A DNA stretch of 64,000 nt from Asterias rubens (GCF_902459465.1 NC_047070.1:2728001-2792000); one strand, 5' to 3'; positions 1 through 46,172 are shown, counted from the stretch's first letter. Notes: a model not told the origin generated them from the letters alone. Translations and numbers: made by a program.

Positions 1-469
1 AAACACGGCTGACCTATGTGTACACATTGTCTAGGCATTAATATACTATTCAGATTATTTTATTATTCACAATATAAGTCTGATTTTTGCAAGGAAAAAA
101 AAAATCGAAAAAACTAAACTAAAAGTAGGATGGATATCATGCCTGTAGAGCAAGACACCATTCATGTTTTGTGTAATCTGTATTTTGTTACCGCATACCT
201 TTCCATATCGTGACCAAACTTATACATGAAATTAAAATACCTATGCAAATTCCTGTCAGGAAATTTATATGAAAAAACATGCACAATTTTTAGCTTGTAT
301 GTAATCACACTGTCATTAATTTGGGTTATAAAAATTTGCTATAGATTTTTAAAAAGAGGTTATCATCTAAAAAGGTAATTGTTTTGGCAAATCAAAGCAT
401 CAGTTCATCTGAGACGAATTTCAGTATTTAAAAAAGGTTGATCTTCCAAAAGTACCTTTAAAATACTTT

Positions 470-710
470 TTAAAGACACTGGACACTTACTGGACACTAT
501 TGGTAATTGTCAAAGACCAGTCTTCTCACTCAAAATCAAGTTCAAATATTTTAGTGGAAAATTACTTCTTTCTCGAAAACTACGCTACTTCAGAGACGGC
601 CGTTTCTCAAAAAGTGTTATACTATCAACAGCTCTCCATTGCTTGTTATCAAGTAATTTTTTACGCTAACGATTATTTTGAGTAATAACCAATAGTGTCC
701 ATGCCTTTAA
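470..710. mobile_element. TTAA-flanked MITE family A (Kolobok/piggyBac-type ends), internally deleted copy
   Basis: TIR ttaaagrcastggacactattggtaatt...aattaccaatagtgtccactgcctttaa shared with many copies in the window. Confidence 0.75.
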
Positions 711-1148
711 ACTGTCTAATTCTTATCCATAAACATTATACCTTAGTTTGCAATTGAAACGAAGAGTAAGTTAAAAACCATTATAATTTGTCTGCATTCC
801 AGAGACGATGAAGGAAGAGTCTGAAACCTTCCCCTTCATGTCTCTCGTCATTCTGAATGTGACCCTATAAAAGGTTCAACAGAAAAATTTACACTGCGCC
901 ATTATAGAGGTGCCCTACAAATAGTGGAGTAATTACAAAATGTACACCCTGCCTTTAAAAGGACAACTGTATAAAGCCAGCTGGGTTGAGTATCTTCTTG
1001 AGGAGAATAAAAACTCAACTTTGAGTGAGTAAGATCATGTCCCAATGCACCTCTGACATAAACATCAAAATCAAAAGTAGTGTTGGGGTATAATTCCCCC
1101 AAAGATAAGGCTTCAACATCTGCAACCGATTTCCAACCAGAAACTCCA

Positions 1149-3352
1149 TTAATGCATAAATACGTTAGAATTGGTACCTCCTATTATGGCAAAGTTGTTG
1201 TTACCTGTTATGGTAACATTTCTACCCTGACCCCTTCCAGTTACGACCCCCGCAGTTCTTGAACTTTCCTGTCTCACAGGCTGTCCATCAACTTCATCCA
1301 AGTCGACTGCATAAAAAAGGAAACAGAAAACCATGATTAAATCATTGAAAATATGGTCTAAGTAGGACTTATTAAATGAATTTTCCACAAAACACAGCCA
1401 ATACTTTCAAAATTTTCGTTTATGTTTCGACTAATATCGGTTGGTGGCGCTGTTTCCTGCTCAGCCACTGGATGGTGGTTTGGCCGATTGTGTCCTCCCC
1501 GGGGGTGAAACTTGGGATATGAGGGAGTCCCATAAACCCCAAGTTTCACCCAGGTGAGGACACAATCTGCCAAACCACCGTCCAGTGGCAGTAGCAGGAA
1601 ACAGCGCCACCAACCGACTGGTGGTGCCTCATTCTGAGGATGACTAGTGATACTAGTTGAAACGTAAACAAAAACTACGTATTGGCTGTGTTTTGTAGAA
1701 AATTCATATAATAAGTTGATATTTTACCAGCCTGATGAACGTCTTTGATGGTATAAGTAGGATTTGAAACTGTGCATGGTGGAAGTATAACTAAGAGAGG
1801 TGTGTGGTAACACCCTGTGAATATCTCTTCATAGTAGTATGTTGGTTCAGAAAAGAACTGGTGGTGGATGACTCAATGTTTCGATCAGTATGCTCTGATC
1901 ATCCTCAGGGGAATGCTGGACTAAGGCCATTAACTATTTTCTAAAAATAATTTTTGTCTCGTTGAGAGGGAATTTATTTTCAAATGTATATTTACAATGG
2001 ATTTACACGACTCTCCTTAAAACGCTGTACTATGATTTTTTCACTTTTTTTTCTTGATGACTAATGAAGATGAAACTACTTCAGGTAAATTATATTACAT
2101 ACATCTTCATTCACAGTCAGTTAGGGATTCATGTCGTGGCCAAAAACTTGATCTACAAAAGGTATCGAAACCCTTTACGGGAACATTACAGAACTGGTAT
2201 GAGAAAAAAACTTGTCTAAGATCACAGTTTTACATAAAACTTACACGGTCTAGTTATGTACAAACAAAACATCACTTGAAATATTTCTGTCTGAAATGTC
2301 ATATTTGATGAAAAATAAATAAAACTAATTTCCTGTTTGGAGTTATTCGCTCAGTGAGCGTTTTATTCATTTTATTTTTTAATCAATGTCATGCAAAATG
2401 TGTGATCGGTTTTTCACTATTTTCTCGTGACCCAGACAGCCGATTGATCTCAAACTTCTACAGGTTTGTCAGTTTATGTATATGGTTGATCACATCAAAT
2501 GCTTACACTGCCAGCAACTGTTTTGTTAGCAAAAACCAATTCCATTTGTTCCTGTACGAAATTCTTTAAGGGATAAAACATACCTGGCAGAGAGGTGTTG
2601 TCCAACTTCTCGACCAGATGTTCATACACAGGGAACTCACACAACACATTTCTGAACTTTCCATATGCATTGGGTCCTCTTTTCTCCAGGTCATTTAGCA
2701 TTTTACTCATCTGGCCCTGTGAAAGGAACATGACACATTAATCATTCAAAACAGTTTGAAAAGATCTCAAAGTGCTTTACAAACAAACATGCTTTCAACA
2801 AAAGTTTACTATCAATAATGTCGGAGTTATAAGCCATGCGTGTTAGATTTGAATAATGTCTGGTACAATGACGTGCTTGACCACAAGTTACCATTTAAAT
2901 TTGAATTATTCAGTCTATCAGTATGTCGCATAATTAGGGGCAAGCTTTTGCGTAGTAACGTAAGAGACGGTGAACACCCATACACAATTCTGAATGAATG
3001 TGTATGACACAATGGTACCAGGGTTTGCTCATCTGGAGGTTGCTATGCAAAAGGCTCGCCCCGAACCATTTGACATAGCAACTGTCTTATTAGTCTGATT
3101 ATTTCAAATGTAAGCGGTACATTGTGACTAAAACAAGTCATTGTATCGACATTATTCAAATCCAACTCTCAAATGGCGTATTGACCTTAATGACCTCTCT
3201 CTTACTTTAGCTGTAGATTGCGCAAATATTTCCTCCATCATCTGGGGAGAGAAAACCTCCTCCTGAATTAGATGATCCGAAACTTTACTAGGTTCGATGT
3301 CCAGCAAAGCACAGCGATTTCTCCTCAGTCGTTGCTTATCTCGATTTTCCAT
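1149..3352 (-). CDS. Small CARD-domain protein (RAIDD/caspase-9-type CARD) with C-terminal RHIM-like motif, 145 aa, 3 coding exons
   Basis: Exons 3352-3206 (phase 0), 2716-2584 (phase 1) and 1306-1149, all GT-AG with pyrimidine-rich acceptors, total 438 nt. Translation MENRDKQRLRRNRCALLDIEPSKVSDHLIQEEVF...LEKRGPNAYGKFRNVL... fits a CARD (recalled RAIDD start MEARDKQVLR; RGPxA motif). Ends NVTITGNNNFAIIGGTNSNVFMH*. An acceptor at 3368-3369 implies an upstream non-coding exon; a strong minus-strand donor (GTAAGT) lies at 4866-4871. Confidence 0.82.
1378..1707. mobile_element. Foldback element with Penelope-like terminal segments as inverted arms
   Basis: 1437-1490 is the reverse complement of about 1569-1620, and 1378-1435 of about 1648-1707; the right arm carries a hammerhead-type core. 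Confidence 0.5.
1631..1669 (+). ncRNA. Minimal hammerhead-ribozyme-like motif (Penelope-like element type)
   Basis: ATT-CTGAGGA-T-GACTAG-tgata-CTAGTT-GAAAC-GTA-AAC: CUGANGA box, 6-bp stem II, GAAAC, palindromic ACGT in place of stem III, GUA triplet; stem I only 2 bp. Activity unknown. Confidence 0.5.
1765..1920 (-). mobile_element. Penelope-like terminal-repeat fragment with degenerate hammerhead core (1872-1911)
   Basis: Minus strand CTGAGGA-T-GATCAG-agcata-CTGATC-GAAAC-ATT-GAG. Related flanks (ttggytctgaaaagarc) recur at 44300-44440, 49850-49955 and 60855-61005. Confidence 0.5.
2173..2569. mobile_element. TTAA-flanked MITE family B
   Basis: Near-identical to 45785-46172 and 61214-61598; TIR aggaacrttacagaattgg...ccaattctgtaatgttcct. 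Confidence 0.75.
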
Positions 3353-4544
3353 CTTTTGGCAGAGTACCTAGATAGAATTAGAATAGGACAGAATTATAGG
3401 TCAATATTTGATCAGGTCTTTGAAAAGGATTGAAAAGCGTCTGCAATGTCTAAAGGGTTAGGCTAATGGCTACTTAGTAATAAGGCCGTGTTCGAAACGG
3501 CGATTTTGGCTACAGCTACGGCTAGATCAGCGCGTCTGCCTGTATTGAAGAATAGGCGGACGCGTGCGATCTAGCCGTAGATGTAGCCGAAGTCACCGTT
3601 TTAGACATGGTCTTACATAGGAAAGTACTTTAGCATGTTTTTTCTCCTGTAGCAATCATGGAGGTAGAGATTGTAATCATGATGTATACTTAGCTGATAA
3701 AAGTTTTAAATAGGGGCTCCAAGTCCAATGTCAAGTTAAGTGATGTTATATCTGATACTTAGAATAGTAGGACGATAAACAGCAAGCTAGTACATATTTG
3801 ACGCAACAGTGACAAAAATGGTTCCATTTGAACTTTATGGTAATTTATTACTGGCGAGGTCTCGCAAATATCTCGTATTCTGTAACCCTCTGGTCTGTCT
3901 GCGATTGTCGGGAAGATGGAGGGTAACGGTTGCAATCGTCCATCTATCGCCCTCTTTTGTCCATGCTGTACAAACTATGGAATCTGTGCAAGATGGCTGC
4001 TTATATTTATATTACAGATAGGCCCTACATTTTTTCACAAGAAAAACCGCTATTCTTAGAAGTGGAAAAGTTAAATGTTACCCCAAACATATCCCTCTTT
4101 TGTAGATTTTAAATGGTTAACCTAGTAGAGTAGTTGCGACCTGCGGGAGGAGGGTTACGTTATCGCAACTTTAGAGGTTGGACAGTACAGTCAGTAGTTA
4201 CGTTCGTGTTGGGACTGTTGACATCGAGTTCGTTGAAGCCTAAATGGACCTAGACCCAGTGACTGGGGCGCTAGAGAATCTAGATACCTTTTTTCTAAAT
4301 TTTGACATTATCGGTCATTATGTCAAAATGGACCCACGTCGATGCAATTCAATTCAATAACTTATTGAATAAGCCTTTTTGTTGAGATATGGCAGACACA
4401 TGTACTACAACACTCTAAGGACCTTAGTAAGGTTTGGGTAAATGTGTGTGTATTTCAACCAAACTACACTCCGTATCCTCTATCACGTCCGCCATACCTC
4501 AAAAAGGCTTTTTAAATATGGACATTTACTACTCCTAGTCCTAG

Positions 4545-4678
4545 TCCTAGAACTATTTCGGTTTCGTCCGGCTATCGTCTACGGGAGACGATAGCCGGAC
4601 GAAACCGAAATAGTTCTGTTTCGTCCGGCTATCGTCTCCCGTAGACGATAGCCGGACGAAACCGAAATAGTTCTAGGA
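4545..4678. repeat. Perfect nested inverted repeat
   Basis: About 61-bp arms are exact reverse complements around a 12-bp spacer; each arm contains its own 20-bp-stem hairpin. Confidence 0.9.
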
Positions 4679-6223
4679 GTATACATTTACCAAGGAACTC
4701 ACCTTTACCAAACCAAGCAAGACGAACTGGGCAAATCTGACGATTATCAAGTTGGGACGGAACAAATCTACTTTTGTTTTGTGATTGATTGAATTTAATC
4801 ATTCAGATGATCGGTTCCAATTCCAATTCGTACATGTCGTAATTATTCATACTCGTGTATTGTATACTTACCAGTACAGTTATTGTTCCATGCAGAACCA
4901 CACTCTGCTCTGGTCACTCTTGCTACTTTTGACATAAAACCGTAGTTCCGTATGGTTTATTTACCACCAAAAAAAAATAGAATCAAGAAAATACCGTGCG
5001 TTTGAAGTTTCCTATGTTGTTGTTGATGTCGATCTATATCTACGTACCGCGTCCGGCCGTATCAAAATATCCTGTTTTTTCCCCAAAAAGCATTGGCCTT
5101 GATTGTCAAATGAGGGCGCTATACCCAAAATCCTGTCTTGGGGTCCGGTGTTTTTTTTCACAAAGTGAAAAAGGGATAGGGGAAGCACAATAACTAAGGT
5201 TAAAAAATTACTAATTGTTATAACTTCAAAGAAACATCAGAAACCTTTCTCATAGTAATTGTATCTAGCTTTTAATATTTAATTTTATTTCTTGACAATT
5301 ACCATTTTTTGTATTACCAATGAAACCTTTACGCGAGATTTATTCATCAACAAAGAAACATTGGCATACTTTTAAATAATTATAATTCTGCAATGTATTC
5401 ACTTATTTATTCAAACACCTCACCAAACAATTTCTTTTTCTTTCAAACATTGATTTGAAATACAATTTTTACGACCAAATTAGATTTTTTACTTTTTTTG
5501 TAAGTTTATTTATAAAGAGCATAACCTATGAACCCCATGCTGTTTATTTATTTATTTATAGTTTACTCCCACTTTGTTGGTTCAATAGTTGTCAAATTAG
5601 AAATGCGAGAGAATAAAACTGAAGAAAGGTGTTTAAAGTCGAGTTGCTTATTGGAAATACATTGGTACATTTTACTTCTTTTTGATGTTCTTTATCTGGA
5701 AGGAAGTTGCCAAAATAAAATCAAATATCTTTGGCCAATTTTGTTGGCTTGTTTATCCATACTGATATTTCCAACAAATGACCGATTTAGCTTGATGGCA
5801 TCTAAGTGGTTTTGTAGTACTTCAAGTTCATGCCTTCAAATGATTAAGTCCTAATGTACCATTTTAAGGTTCAAGGCTTCAACATTTCCAAAACAATTCA
5901 ACTCATCAAATCCTTAGACATAGACCAGCTGCAGAACGTCCTGCACTAATAAACCTGATAATTTATGCTATGACAACATTTGACTAGTGGGTGCATGGGT
6001 GAAAAATTGTACAAGTTGTGATAATCATAATACCATTCTTACTCTAAGACCATTGGGGAGTGAGTGTTACGATTATCACAACCTTATCAGATGTGTACTC
6101 TGACCAAGCAGGCCTTGCATTTAAGCCCACAGCCACACACAGCAATTGCCTTGGTGCCCAAAAGCTTTTGCTGTGGAGCCATTTGCAAAGTTCTTATACA
6201 AACAAGGCCTGCCTAAGCCAGCT

Positions 6224-9730: not shown

Positions 9731-10795
9731 TTACTGCACTCCAATAAATTGTGTAATGGGTGGGGCATCCACCATCAGCATCTTATACTCCTTAGTGAAG
9801 AACTTGAGGCGGTCGAAGTATCCGCGTTTCTGGTACGGCAATCCATGCTCCTGCAAATACTGCTGTACAATGGGTTGGATCTTCAAACACATGTTGTCAG
9901 ACAGCTTGGGAAAGAGATGGTGCTCGATATGGCAGGCAATCAGTGAGTGTCCGAAATTCCAGTCCAGTAACAGATTATGGGATAGATTGAGGACTCCGCT
10001 GGACATCAGGTGGAGACGTGGCGGGCGACTATCACGTGCGTACATCGGTAATCCGATATGTTGAAAGATGTTGACATGGATGTAAGGGATGTCCATGAGA
10101 GCGCGGTAGACAAGTGTACTCAGCACAGCCGCCTTGGCAGTGAGACCGGAGACGAACATCAGTAGTGAGATGTTGGCTACTAGGCCAACGGATACCACGA
10201 TAAAACACTGAAAAGCTTTCAGCACTTTCTTATCTTGGAGAAGAAAAACGACTGCTCCGATCGGAGTCATGACTGGTAGGAAAAGCGGGGCTACAAACAA
10301 ATAGATGTATCTCGGCAAACTTGGCACCCGCCATGTGCTAGAATCACCCAGCCCGATGACATTGGTATAGGGATGGTGGACTTTAACGTGGGCACCAATT
10401 GCGTACTCGGCTGAAAAGGATCCGCAAAACTCAATGAAGAACAACTGCCAGAAGCGATTGACGAGCTTTGAACGGCACAGGGCAGAGTGGGATGCGAGAT
10501 GAGACATCTTGGTTTTGAGCATTCCATAGTAGAATCCCAATAAGATCAGACCTGCGATGAACGGAGGCCAAGTCTGGTGCCTAAGAAGCAATAGACCAGG
10601 AGGGATCATGGCGAAACCTGATGCGATGTAGCACCAGTCTACACCATAGAGATCCCACCAGGATGATGCTTCTTGAACCTTCTGGACAGCAGCAGTCAGC
10701 TCACTCAGGCTAGCTTTTATTTCCACATCTGTCTCTTGATGAGACGACAACGACTGCTGCTCTCCACTTGATGCTGATGCTGATTTTCGTTGCAT
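9731..10795 (-). CDS. FADS6: Fatty acid desaturase 6-like membrane desaturase, 354 aa, single coding exon, no cytochrome b5 domain
   Basis: Uninterrupted ORF with histidine boxes HLASH, HVKVHHPYTN, HVNIFQH and CHIEHHLFP plus hydrophobic segments, matching FADS6 as recalled. Acceptor at 10812-10813, just 5' of the ATG, indicates a 5'-UTR intron. Confidence 0.92.
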   Translation of the reverse strand: MQRKSASASSGEQQSLSSHQETDVEIKASLSELTAAVQKVQEASSWWDLYGVDWCYIASGFAMIPPGLLLLRHQTWPPFIAGLILLGFYYGMLKTKMSHLASHSALCRSKLVNRFWQLFFIEFCGSFSAEYAIGAHVKVHHPYTNVIGLGDSSTWRVPSLPRYIYLFVAPLFLPVMTPIGAVVFLLQDKKVLKAFQCFIVVSVGLVANISLLMFVSGLTAKAAVLSTLVYRALMDIPYIHVNIFQHIGLPMYARDSRPPRLHLMSSGVLNLSHNLLLDWNFGHSLIACHIEHHLFPKLSDNMCLKIQPIVQQYLQEHGLPYQKRGYFDRLKFFTKEYKMLMVDAPPITQFIGVQ

Positions 10796-45784: not shown

Positions 45785-46172
45785 TTAAAGGAACGTTACA
45801 GAATTGGTAAGTAACAAAAATCGTGAAGATCACAGGTTTACATAAAACTTACACGGTCTAAATGATGATGATAGTAGAAAACATCCCTTGAAATATTGTT
45901 GTCTGAAAAGTCATATTTGATGAGAAATAAATAATCTAAATTCGCTTTTGGAGCTTAACGCTCAGTGAGCGTTTTATTCATTTTTTTGTTTTGGCATCGA
46001 TGCAATGCAAAATTTGTAATTTATTTTTCACTATTCTCCCGTGACCCAGATGGCTGATCGATCTCAAACTTCTACAGGTTTGTCATTTTATGTTTATGAT
46101 GGATTACATAAAGTACTTACACTACCAGCAGCTGTTTGGTTAGCAAAAACCAATTCTGTAATGTTCCTTTAA
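45785..46172. mobile_element. TTAA-flanked MITE family B
   Basis: TTAA ends, TIR, shared interior. Confidence 0.85.

What the first reader, a model, noticed from the sequence alone, without database searches (positions are those of the whole stretch)
1149..3352. Candidate CARD plus RHIM-like amyloid adaptor: a RAIDD-type CARD with an Asn/Gly beta-arch tail instead of a death domain
Seen: three phase-compatible exons give a 145-aa protein consisting of a CARD (about residues 1-90), a short linker and a terminal RNVTITGNNNFAIIGGTNSNVFMH. Established: RHIMs (RIPK1 IQIGxxN, RIPK3 VQVGxxN, TRIF, ZBP1) form signalling amyloids, and CARDs nucleate filaments. Inference: TITGNNNF-AIIG-GT-N aligns to the RHIM pattern (hydrophobic, then N, then (I/V)x(I/V)G-x-x-N) but with a non-canonical AIIG core, and it looks like two G-N turn pseudo-repeats. 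No catalytic, death or NACHT domain is present, so this could be a bridge between CARD filaments and amyloid signalling in an invertebrate deuterostome. The ORF track splits the gene into three unrelated fragments.
Basis: partly seen in the sequence, partly recalled or inferred. Interest (0 to 1): 0.78.

Follow-up and report, generated by a model that had tools for sequence, protein, structure and literature searches.

The report
Starfish CARD protein with conserved beta-tail
This is a real, expressed starfish gene for a small cell-death adaptor-like protein: a CARD domain, a conserved caspase-type cutting site, and a short conserved beta-strand tail that could be a new self-assembly motif but is not a recognisable RHIM.

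Summary
The window is Asterias rubens. The 145-aa model is identical to RefSeq XP_033633328.1 ("caspase-2-like"). Residues 1-93 are a firm CARD, closest to the RAIDD and caspase-9 CARDs. No death, caspase or NACHT domain follows.

The tail is not noise. Its core is conserved in A. amurensis, an unidentified third species and Acanthaster planci (a different order), while the linker drifts. A tandem paralogue has the same build. All seven sequences also keep a DExD site (DEVD|G here) right after the CARD.

The RHIM reading fails every test I could run:
- The Pfam RHIM profile gives no hit.
- No RHIM chain in the PDB matches.
- The (V/I)-Q-(V/I/L/C)-G tetrad and the G-phi-Q-phi-G signature are absent.
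- No other eukaryotic protein with the motif was found.

The only outside look-alikes are domain junctions in bacterial adhesins, probably by convergence.

Best reading: a starfish family of CARD regulators whose tail is a beta-strand assembly motif that caspase cleavage could detach. Amyloid behaviour is possible (about 0.25) but untested.

The parts
4872..5010 (-).
   Evidence: Joint 3364-3367|4869-4872 with GT..AG ends in contigs of X1, X2 and X14. Pieces reach 5000-5010. It contains the in-frame stop upstream of the ATG.
3206..3367 (-). Exon holding the start codon (ATG 3352-3350) and CARD helices 1-3 (residues 1-49)
   Evidence: Pfam CARD profile positions 2-44, E 4.5e-5 for this exon alone. 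Donor AAA|GTAAGA. RNA joint.
2584..2716 (-). Exon for CARD helices 4-6 (residues 50-93, phase-1 end)
   Evidence: Pfam CARD profile positions 48-83, E 4.8e-4. Acceptor TTTCACAG|G and donor CAG|GTATGT. RNA joints on both sides.
677..1306 (-). Terminal exon: CDS 1306-1149 (residues 94-145, stop TAA 1151-1149) and 3'UTR from 1148 to at least 677
   Evidence: Transcript contigs are continuous from 1306 through the stop to 677-735. A further contig at 1-510 has the same depth, so the UTR may run on through the repeat at 510-677.
1284..1298 (-). DEVD|G (residues 97-101), a caspase-3/7-type cleavage consensus at the start of the last exon
   Evidence: D-E-x-D is kept in all seven family members: DEVD|G, DEID|G, DEMD|G, DEPD|M. 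Cleavage itself is not tested.
1251..1283 (-). Drifting linker (residues 102-112)
   Evidence: dN/dS 0.56 for residues 94-112, against 0.10 for the CARD. It cannot be aligned between Asterias and Acanthaster. pLDDT under 50.
1152..1250 (-). Conserved beta-prone tail (residues 113-145). The core is residues 122-145 = 1152-1223, with invariant Gly128 and Gly137.
   Evidence: Alignments A1, A3, A4. dN/dS 0.22. AlphaFold2 on the tail alone gives three strands, 113-119, 122-128 and 133-138, at pLDDT 71-79. In the full-length monomer model the tail is disordered.

Best explanation
This gene belongs to a starfish (Asteroidea) family of small CARD proteins that occur as tandem pairs. Shown here: each member has an N-terminal CARD of the RAIDD/caspase-9 type, a conserved DExD site immediately after the CARD, a fast-drifting disordered linker, and a conserved C-terminal core of about 24 residues. 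The core is three short hydrophobic strands separated by two invariant Gly turns with Asn/His/Asp. Inferred: the CARD docks the protein onto a CARD platform. In starfish that platform is most plausibly Apaf-1 with the CARD-bearing DEVDase caspase-3/9 or the caspase-9 paralogues. The tail folds only on assembly and gives a second, beta-sheet-based self- or paralogue-association surface. That surface could be a beta-arch stack (amyloid-like) or a simple beta-augmentation. Cleavage at DExD by an active caspase would uncouple the CARD from the tail, acting as a feedback switch. In logic this resembles RHIM adaptors. In family it is a CARD-only regulator with a new tail, not a RHIM protein.
For: Gene, splicing and expression. 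CARD: Pfam 51.1 bits. AlphaFold2 gives a six-helix bundle with pLDDT 88-95 and a kinked helix 1. Foldseek TM 0.83-0.90 to caspase-9 and Apaf-1 CARDs. The RAIDD CARD is the best PDB sequence hit. Tail conservation: 96% identity to A. amurensis and 75% to the third species. The GNNNFA-hh-GG-x-N core is kept in Acanthaster planci (Valvatida, against Forcipulatida for Asterias). Paralogues of the same build lie 4.4-4.6 kb downstream in A. rubens and A. amurensis, and 4 kb upstream in A. planci. The only invariant tail columns are the two Gly, which fits turns of a folded beta motif better than anchor residues of a linear peptide ligand. dN/dS is 0.22 for the tail and 0.56 for the linker. The A. 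rubens core has no Pro, Lys, Leu or acidic residue and is 6 Asn, 3 Gly, 3 Ile, 3 Thr, 2 Val of 24. That matches the composition reported for amyloid signalling motifs of about 25 aa (bioRxiv 10.1101/2020.01.06.895854). AlphaFold2 on the tail alone gives three strands. Starfish have a CARD-bearing DEVDase activated by Apaf-1 through CARD-CARD binding (PMC5785508).
Against: No experiment bears on assembly, cleavage or partners. Every RHIM or amyloid-motif profile test was negative. The exhaustive tail-profile search of 1.84 billion proteins found no other eukaryotic carrier at E<=0.001. That search also missed the known B paralogues, so it is insensitive to diverged copies. The B-type tails carry charged residues and change quickly between the two Asterias species. 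The monomer model shows only disorder. The tail-alone model has moderate confidence, rests on seven sequences, and is an antiparallel meander rather than a cross-beta arch. The dN/dS counts are small (8-9 changes per class).
Confidence: 0.45

Rival explanations
1. It is a plain CARD-only decoy, like vertebrate ICEBERG/COP/INCA or ARC. The CARD caps or competes on a CARD platform. The tail is a peptide ligand for a folded partner, a localisation signal or a stability element, with no self-assembly.
For: The CARD is the only globular domain. The family arose by tandem duplication, as the vertebrate CARD-only genes did. No second protein type carrying the motif was found. The tail is disordered in the monomer model.
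Against: About 24 conserved residues is long for a linear motif. The invariant positions are glycines, with alternating hydrophobic residues between them, a pattern typical of a folded beta unit.
Confidence: 0.3
2. It is a CARD-targeted caspase substrate or pseudosubstrate. The CARD brings the conserved DExD site to an active CARD caspase. The protein then titrates or reports caspase activity, and the released C-terminal fragment may have its own role.
For: D-E-x-D is the most conserved feature outside the CARD, present in 7 of 7 sequences and always followed by a small residue or Met. Starfish caspase-3/9 has both a CARD and DEVDase activity (PMC5785508).
Against: This does not explain the conserved beta core. 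It is compatible with the best explanation rather than exclusive of it. An IAP-binding new N-terminus is not produced, because the new ends start with Gly or Met, not Ala.
Confidence: 0.2
3. It is a true, diverged RHIM, homologous to RIPK1, RIPK3, TRIF, ZBP1 and IMD, that co-assembles with other RHIM proteins.
For: With Gly136 aligned to the tetrad Gly, the A-type tail keeps Asn, Ile, Gly and Asn at RHIM-like spacing. RHIMs do occur in invertebrates at positions otherwise held by death-fold domains (PMC4262963).
Against: No Pfam RHIM hit and no PDB RHIM hit. The tetrad Gln is absent in all members. Gly136 and Asn139 are not kept in the B paralogues. RHIM-bearing RIPK1 is reported absent from echinoderms (PMC12119088, PMC11507063).
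Confidence: 0.07
4. The tail is a relic or chance copy of a bacterial adhesin domain junction (the VTITGxNDAAVIGG-type seam between Cadherin_4/VCBS Ig-like repeats).
For: These adhesins are the only outside hits of the tail profile, together with PDB 6xi1.
Against: The scores are sums over 4-26 repeats. Single stretches score 12-14 bits (E about 0.5-1.4 even in the small PDB set). One seam cannot form an Ig domain. The exon is single-copy in reads and lies in an old intron-bearing starfish gene. Convergence of a strand-turn-strand pattern is the simpler account.
Confidence: 0.03

Closest known systems
CRADD/RAIDD (CARD + death domain adaptor of the PIDDosome)
   Same: A small adaptor with an N-terminal CARD. 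The RAIDD CARD is the best solved-structure sequence match (31.5 bits, E 1.6e-6). RefSeq names the A. amurensis orthologue CRADD-like.
   Different: There is no death domain. A 52-residue tail takes its place. Caspase-2, RAIDD's client, is reported as not identifiable in echinoderms (PMC10959488).
CARD-only proteins (CARD16/COP, CARD17/INCA, CARD18/ICEBERG) and ARC/NOL3. Comparison from general knowledge.
   Same: One CARD plus a short non-globular tail. Born by tandem duplication. Expected to modulate CARD assemblies.
   Different: Those derive from caspase-1 or are confined to vertebrates, and they have no conserved Gly/Asn beta core or DExD site. No caspase gene lies within 10 kb here.
RHIM adaptors (RIPK1, RIPK3, TRIF, ZBP1; Drosophila IMD and PGRP-LC/LE cRHIM)
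   Same: A short Gly/Asn/Ile/Val-rich beta-prone segment, flanked by disorder, in a death-fold or immune adaptor. RIPK1 and RIPK3 are likewise cut by a caspase between modules (PMC13506858).
   Different: The tetrad and the G-phi-Q-phi-G signature are absent. There is no profile match. Two invariant Gly nine residues apart take the place of one tetrad Gly.
Fungal and bacterial amyloid signalling motifs (HET-s/HRAM, PP, sigma, BASS1-10)
   Same: About 25 residues, C-terminal, rich in N/G/V/I and poor in K/P/L. Related copies sit on adjacent genes (bioRxiv 10.1101/2020.01.06.895854).
   Different: The adjacent gene is a paralogue of the same build, not an NLR with the motif at its N-terminus. 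No sequence match to any Pfam amyloid-motif family.
Cadherin_4/VCBS Ig-like repeat junctions of bacterial adhesins (e.g. PDB 6xi1)
   Same: The local strand, Gly-x-Asn-Asp turn and strand sequence is nearly identical over about 15 residues.
   Different: There it is the seam between folded, calcium-binding extracellular domains and is repeated many times. Here it is a single cytosolic copy. Probably convergence.

Membership tests
CARD (Pfam PF00619, death-fold superfamily) | Profile match above the curated cut-off | tested here: met
   51.1 bits against a cut-off of 23.9, residues 7-88. The two exons match the two halves of the profile.
CARD (Pfam PF00619, death-fold superfamily) | Six-helix bundle with a kinked first helix | tested here: met
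   AlphaFold2 pLDDT 88-95 with helices 3-11/13-16, 21-30, 36-43, 48-61, 64-75, 78-89. Foldseek TM 0.83-0.90 to caspase-9 and Apaf-1 CARDs.
CRADD/RAIDD | C-terminal death domain | tested here: not met
   No Death-domain hit. Transcripts end in this exon with a stop codon and 3'UTR.
Caspase-2 (the RefSeq name of this gene) | Peptidase C14 catalytic domain | tested here: not met
   The 145-aa ORF holds only a CARD.
RHIM (Pfam PF12721) | Core tetrad (V/I)-Q-(V/I/L/C)-G (PMC13506858) | tested here: not met
   The equivalent positions read AIIG, AVFG, AVVC, AVVS, TMIG. No member has Gln.
RHIM (Pfam PF12721) | Match to the RHIM profile or to solved RHIM chains | tested here: not met
   No Pfam hit at E<=10 for the tails of two species. 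No RHIM chain at E<=10 with the sequence or the profile. HMMER filters drop most hits above E about 0.1.
RHIM / PP / BASS3 superfamily | Central G-phi-Q-phi-G signature (bioRxiv 10.1101/2020.01.06.895854) | tested here: not met
   Phe, Ser, Thr or Leu stands where the first Gly would be, and there is no Gln.
RHIM and amyloid signalling motifs in general | An 18-25-residue beta-prone segment flanked by disorder, rich in N/G/V/I and poor in K/P/L | tested here: met
   Composition. Disordered linker. Three predicted strands. The B-type tails are less clean, carrying K, R and D.
RHIM and amyloid signalling motifs in general | The same motif on a partner protein (receptor/effector pair, often adjacent genes) | tested here: inconclusive
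   The only second carrier is the adjacent paralogue of the same architecture. There is no NLR, kinase or TIR carrier at E<=0.001, but that search also missed the paralogues.
RHIM and amyloid signalling motifs in general | Forms cross-beta fibrils and templates its partner | not testable with these tools
   Needs ThT, EM, DAmFRET or prion assays.
CARD-only regulators (COP/INCA/ICEBERG type) | The CARD is the sole globular domain, and the gene arose by local duplication | tested here: met
   Tandem pairs in three species.
CARD-only regulators (COP/INCA/ICEBERG type) | Inhibits or caps a CARD assembly | not testable with these tools
   Needs binding and filament assays.

The most novel reading that the evidence does not exclude
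The tail is a new family of metazoan amyloid signalling motif, unrelated in sequence to RHIM. It is fused to a CARD, and the two tandem paralogues co-assemble through it. The result would couple helical CARD filaments to a cross-beta scaffold in starfish cell-death or immune signalling, with caspase cleavage at the conserved DExD site as the off (or release) switch.
Probability: 0.25. Interest if true: 0.8.

Novelty: new variant of a known kind. Interest (0 to 1): 0.55.

Why it matters
Death-fold filaments and RHIM-type amyloids are the two known ways animals build higher-order cell-death and immune signalling complexes. Echinoderms are reported to lack RHIM-bearing RIPK1. A conserved CARD-plus-beta-motif family with a built-in caspase site would be either a new type of CARD regulator or a second, independent animal amyloid-signalling motif. 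Either outcome can be tested directly with short peptides and the starfish egg extract system already used for Apaf-1 and caspase-3/9. It also corrects misleading database names: this protein is neither caspase-2 nor CRADD.

Tried and rejected
- Pfam scans of the tail, alone and in the full protein, for two species gave nothing, including RHIM and the fungal amyloid-motif families.
- phmmer and profile searches of PDB sequences found no RHIM chain.
- The ESM Atlas feature search on the tail had a best score of 0.65, which is uninformative. On the whole protein it returned only CARD clusters.
- The exhaustive tail-profile search returned bacterial adhesins. I considered homology or gene transfer and rejected it, because the scores are sums over many repeats and the domain context differs.
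- An HMM of the core, run against six-frame translations of the window and all fetched loci, found no further hidden copies.
- An IAP-binding new N-terminus after DExD cleavage was rejected, because the new ends start with Gly or Met.
- Orthology of the Acanthaster neighbour gene with the Asterias B paralogue stays unresolved: CARD identity is 44-51% to both types.
- The species of assembly GCA_014845345.1 could not be identified.
- The look-up of isoform P0023 was not on record.
- Earlier scan notes held nothing on this locus.
No tool supplied RHIM sequences, so no profile-profile test was run.

Full report
**1. The observation**

On the minus strand, exons 3352-3206, 2716-2584 and 1306-1149 have canonical splice sites: AAA|GTAAGA, TTTCACAG|G, CAG|GTATGT and TTTTTTATGCAG|T. 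They join into a 438-nt ORF of 145 codons. The product is identical to P0004 = XP_033633328.1, "caspase-2-like", of Asterias rubens. So the window is A. rubens and the model is already in RefSeq.

I laid contigs of four public runs on window 1-6000.
- Three runs from different studies (X1, X2, X14) each hold one transcript contig with joints 1306|2584, 2715|3205 and 3364|4869, all with GT..AG ends on the minus strand.
- The same contigs run on through the stop codon to 677-735.
- The fourth run (X12) covers exon-intron borders and shows none of these joints, so the joined form is RNA.
- In the mRNA an in-frame stop lies 20 codons upstream of the ATG, so 145 aa is the full product.

Contigs can miss rare isoforms.

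**2. The CARD**

- Pfam CARD scores 51.1 bits (cut-off 23.9) over residues 7-88. The two exons match the two halves of the profile separately.
- AlphaFold2 with a four-sequence alignment gives a six-helix bundle with pLDDT 88-95 and the kinked first helix typical of CARDs.
- Foldseek places it on caspase-9 and Apaf-1 CARDs (TM 0.83-0.90, rmsd 1.0-1.7 A).
- By sequence the closest solved chain is the RAIDD CARD (E 1.6e-6), followed by caspase-9.
- No other domain is present.

**3. The tail is conserved, and the gene belongs to a family**

A-type orthologues:

| Species | Protein | Identity to A. rubens |
|---|---|---|
| A. amurensis | P0002 | 92% |
| Unidentified species | P0003, assembly GCA_014845345.1 | 78% |
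| Acanthaster planci | P0021-P0023 | 51% |

Asterias is in Forcipulatida and Acanthaster in Valvatida. Between them the linker cannot be aligned, but the core G-N-N-N-F-A-(I/V)-(I/F)-G-G-x-N is intact.

Each species also has a neighbouring small CARD gene with the same three-coding-exon build:

| Species | Locus | Size | Position |
|---|---|---|---|
| A. rubens | L005:16625-18875 | 138 aa | downstream, just outside the window |
| A. amurensis | L003:16710-19139 | 140 aa | downstream |
| A. planci | L004:3707-5847 | 152 aa | upstream |

My splices reproduce the annotated lengths.

All seven tails were aligned as A4. The core reads: a basic residue or Gln, then h-x-(I/V)-x-G-(N/H/D)-x-(N/S)-x-(A/T)-(I/V/M)-(I/V/F)-x-G-x-(N/H)-x-x-(I/V). 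The two Gly are the only invariant tail columns.

All seven sequences also start the last exon with D-E-x-D: DEVD|G, DEID|G, DEMD|G or DEPD|M.

Nei-Gojobori dN/dS between A. rubens and the third species is 0.10 for the CARD, 0.56 for the linker and 0.22 for the tail. The counts are small.

Read depth shows the exon is single-copy, unlike the repeat-rich introns.

**4. Is it a RHIM? Every test I could run says no**

- There is no Pfam RHIM hit at E<=10.
- No RHIM chain in the PDB matches the tail sequence or the seven-sequence profile at E<=10.
- The tetrad (V/I)-Q-(V/I/L/C)-G (PMC13506858) and the G-phi-Q-phi-G signature shared by RHIM, PP and BASS3 (bioRxiv 10.1101/2020.01.06.895854) are absent in every member.
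It would be common by chance in a proteome.
- RHIM-bearing RIPK1 is reported absent from echinoderms (PMC12119088, PMC11507063).

An exhaustive profile search of 1.84 billion representative proteins found the gene's own cluster. Beyond that it found only bacterial adhesins built of Cadherin_4/Big_9 repeats, whose inter-domain seam reads like the tail. PDB 6xi1 is the same kind of hit. Those scores are sums over many repeats. Single stretches reach 12-14 bits. I read this as convergence on a strand-turn-strand pattern.

The search also failed to recover the B paralogues, so it cannot exclude diverged partner motifs.

**5. What the tail most likely is**

The core is long (about 24 residues). It is conserved across orders and across paralogues. 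It has invariant glycines with alternating hydrophobic residues between them. In A. rubens it has no Pro, Lys, Leu or acidic residue.

AlphaFold2 leaves it disordered in the full-length monomer. For the tail alone it predicts three strands, 113-119, 122-128 and 133-138, at pLDDT 71-79.

This fits a unit that folds on assembly better than a short peptide ligand. It also matches the general description of amyloid signalling motifs: about 25 residues, rich in N/G/V/I, poor in K/P/L, and flanked by disorder. It does not show amyloid.

**6. Mechanism proposed**

Shown:
- the CARD;
- the conserved DExD site;
- the conserved beta core;
- the tandem paralogues;
- expression.

Inferred:
- The CARD docks to a starfish CARD platform. 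Starfish have Apaf-1 and a CARD-bearing DEVDase, caspase-3/9, that bind CARD to CARD (PMC5785508). Caspase-2 is reported as not identifiable in echinoderms, while caspase-9 is expanded (PMC10959488). The RefSeq names are therefore similarity labels only.
- The tail adds a beta-sheet self- or paralogue-association surface.
- Caspase cleavage at DExD separates the two modules.

Rivals:
- a plain CARD-only decoy;
- a CARD-targeted substrate or pseudosubstrate, which is compatible with the main reading;
- a true diverged RHIM (unlikely);
- an adhesin relic (very unlikely).

**7. Novelty**

The gene is annotated but misnamed. I found no paper describing it or its architecture. It is best filed as a new variant of CARD-only regulator with a new conserved tail. 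If the tail proves to be an amyloid switch, it would be a new animal amyloid-signalling motif.

Noticed in passing
window 1367-1716 (intron 2): A nested palindrome of about 350 nt: outer arms 38 nt at 95% complementarity, inner arms 25 nt at 100% and 41 nt at 90%. It looks like a foldback or MITE-type insert.
   Followed up: partly
window 401-800, 1601-2600, 2801-3200, 3401-3600: Very high-copy repeats in the 3'UTR region and introns. Summed contig depth is 10^3 to 10^6 in all four runs, against about 10^2 on the exons. A short stretch at 2501-2560 recurs at 46103-46162.
   Followed up: no
window 9731-10795 (-): An intronless 354-aa ORF with a fatty-acid desaturase domain (Pfam E 3e-18). The same neighbour, plus an L-type lectin gene beyond it, is found in A. 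amurensis, so synteny is conserved.
   Followed up: partly
L005:16625-18875 (A. rubens, just outside the window's low end): The B paralogue (138 aa) with a DEMD|G site and a related tail. Its tail differs a good deal from that of A. amurensis (CARD 83% identical, against 90% for the A gene), so it evolves faster.
   Followed up: partly
L001 (assembly GCA_014845345.1, 2364-nt contig): The orthologue is intronless here, with UTR-like flanks and a 26-nt T run at the contig's start. It is either cDNA-derived sequence in a genome assembly or a processed retrocopy.
   Followed up: no
L004:10001-15218 (Acanthaster planci): Three annotated isoforms share the tail. Two of them use alternative first exons that replace CARD helix 1, which would give a truncated CARD.
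   Followed up: no
window 5265-6000: Separate transcript contigs in X1, X2 and X14 lie just upstream of the gene's 5'UTR exon and run off the stretch examined. They could be another gene or an alternative first exon.
   Followed up: no
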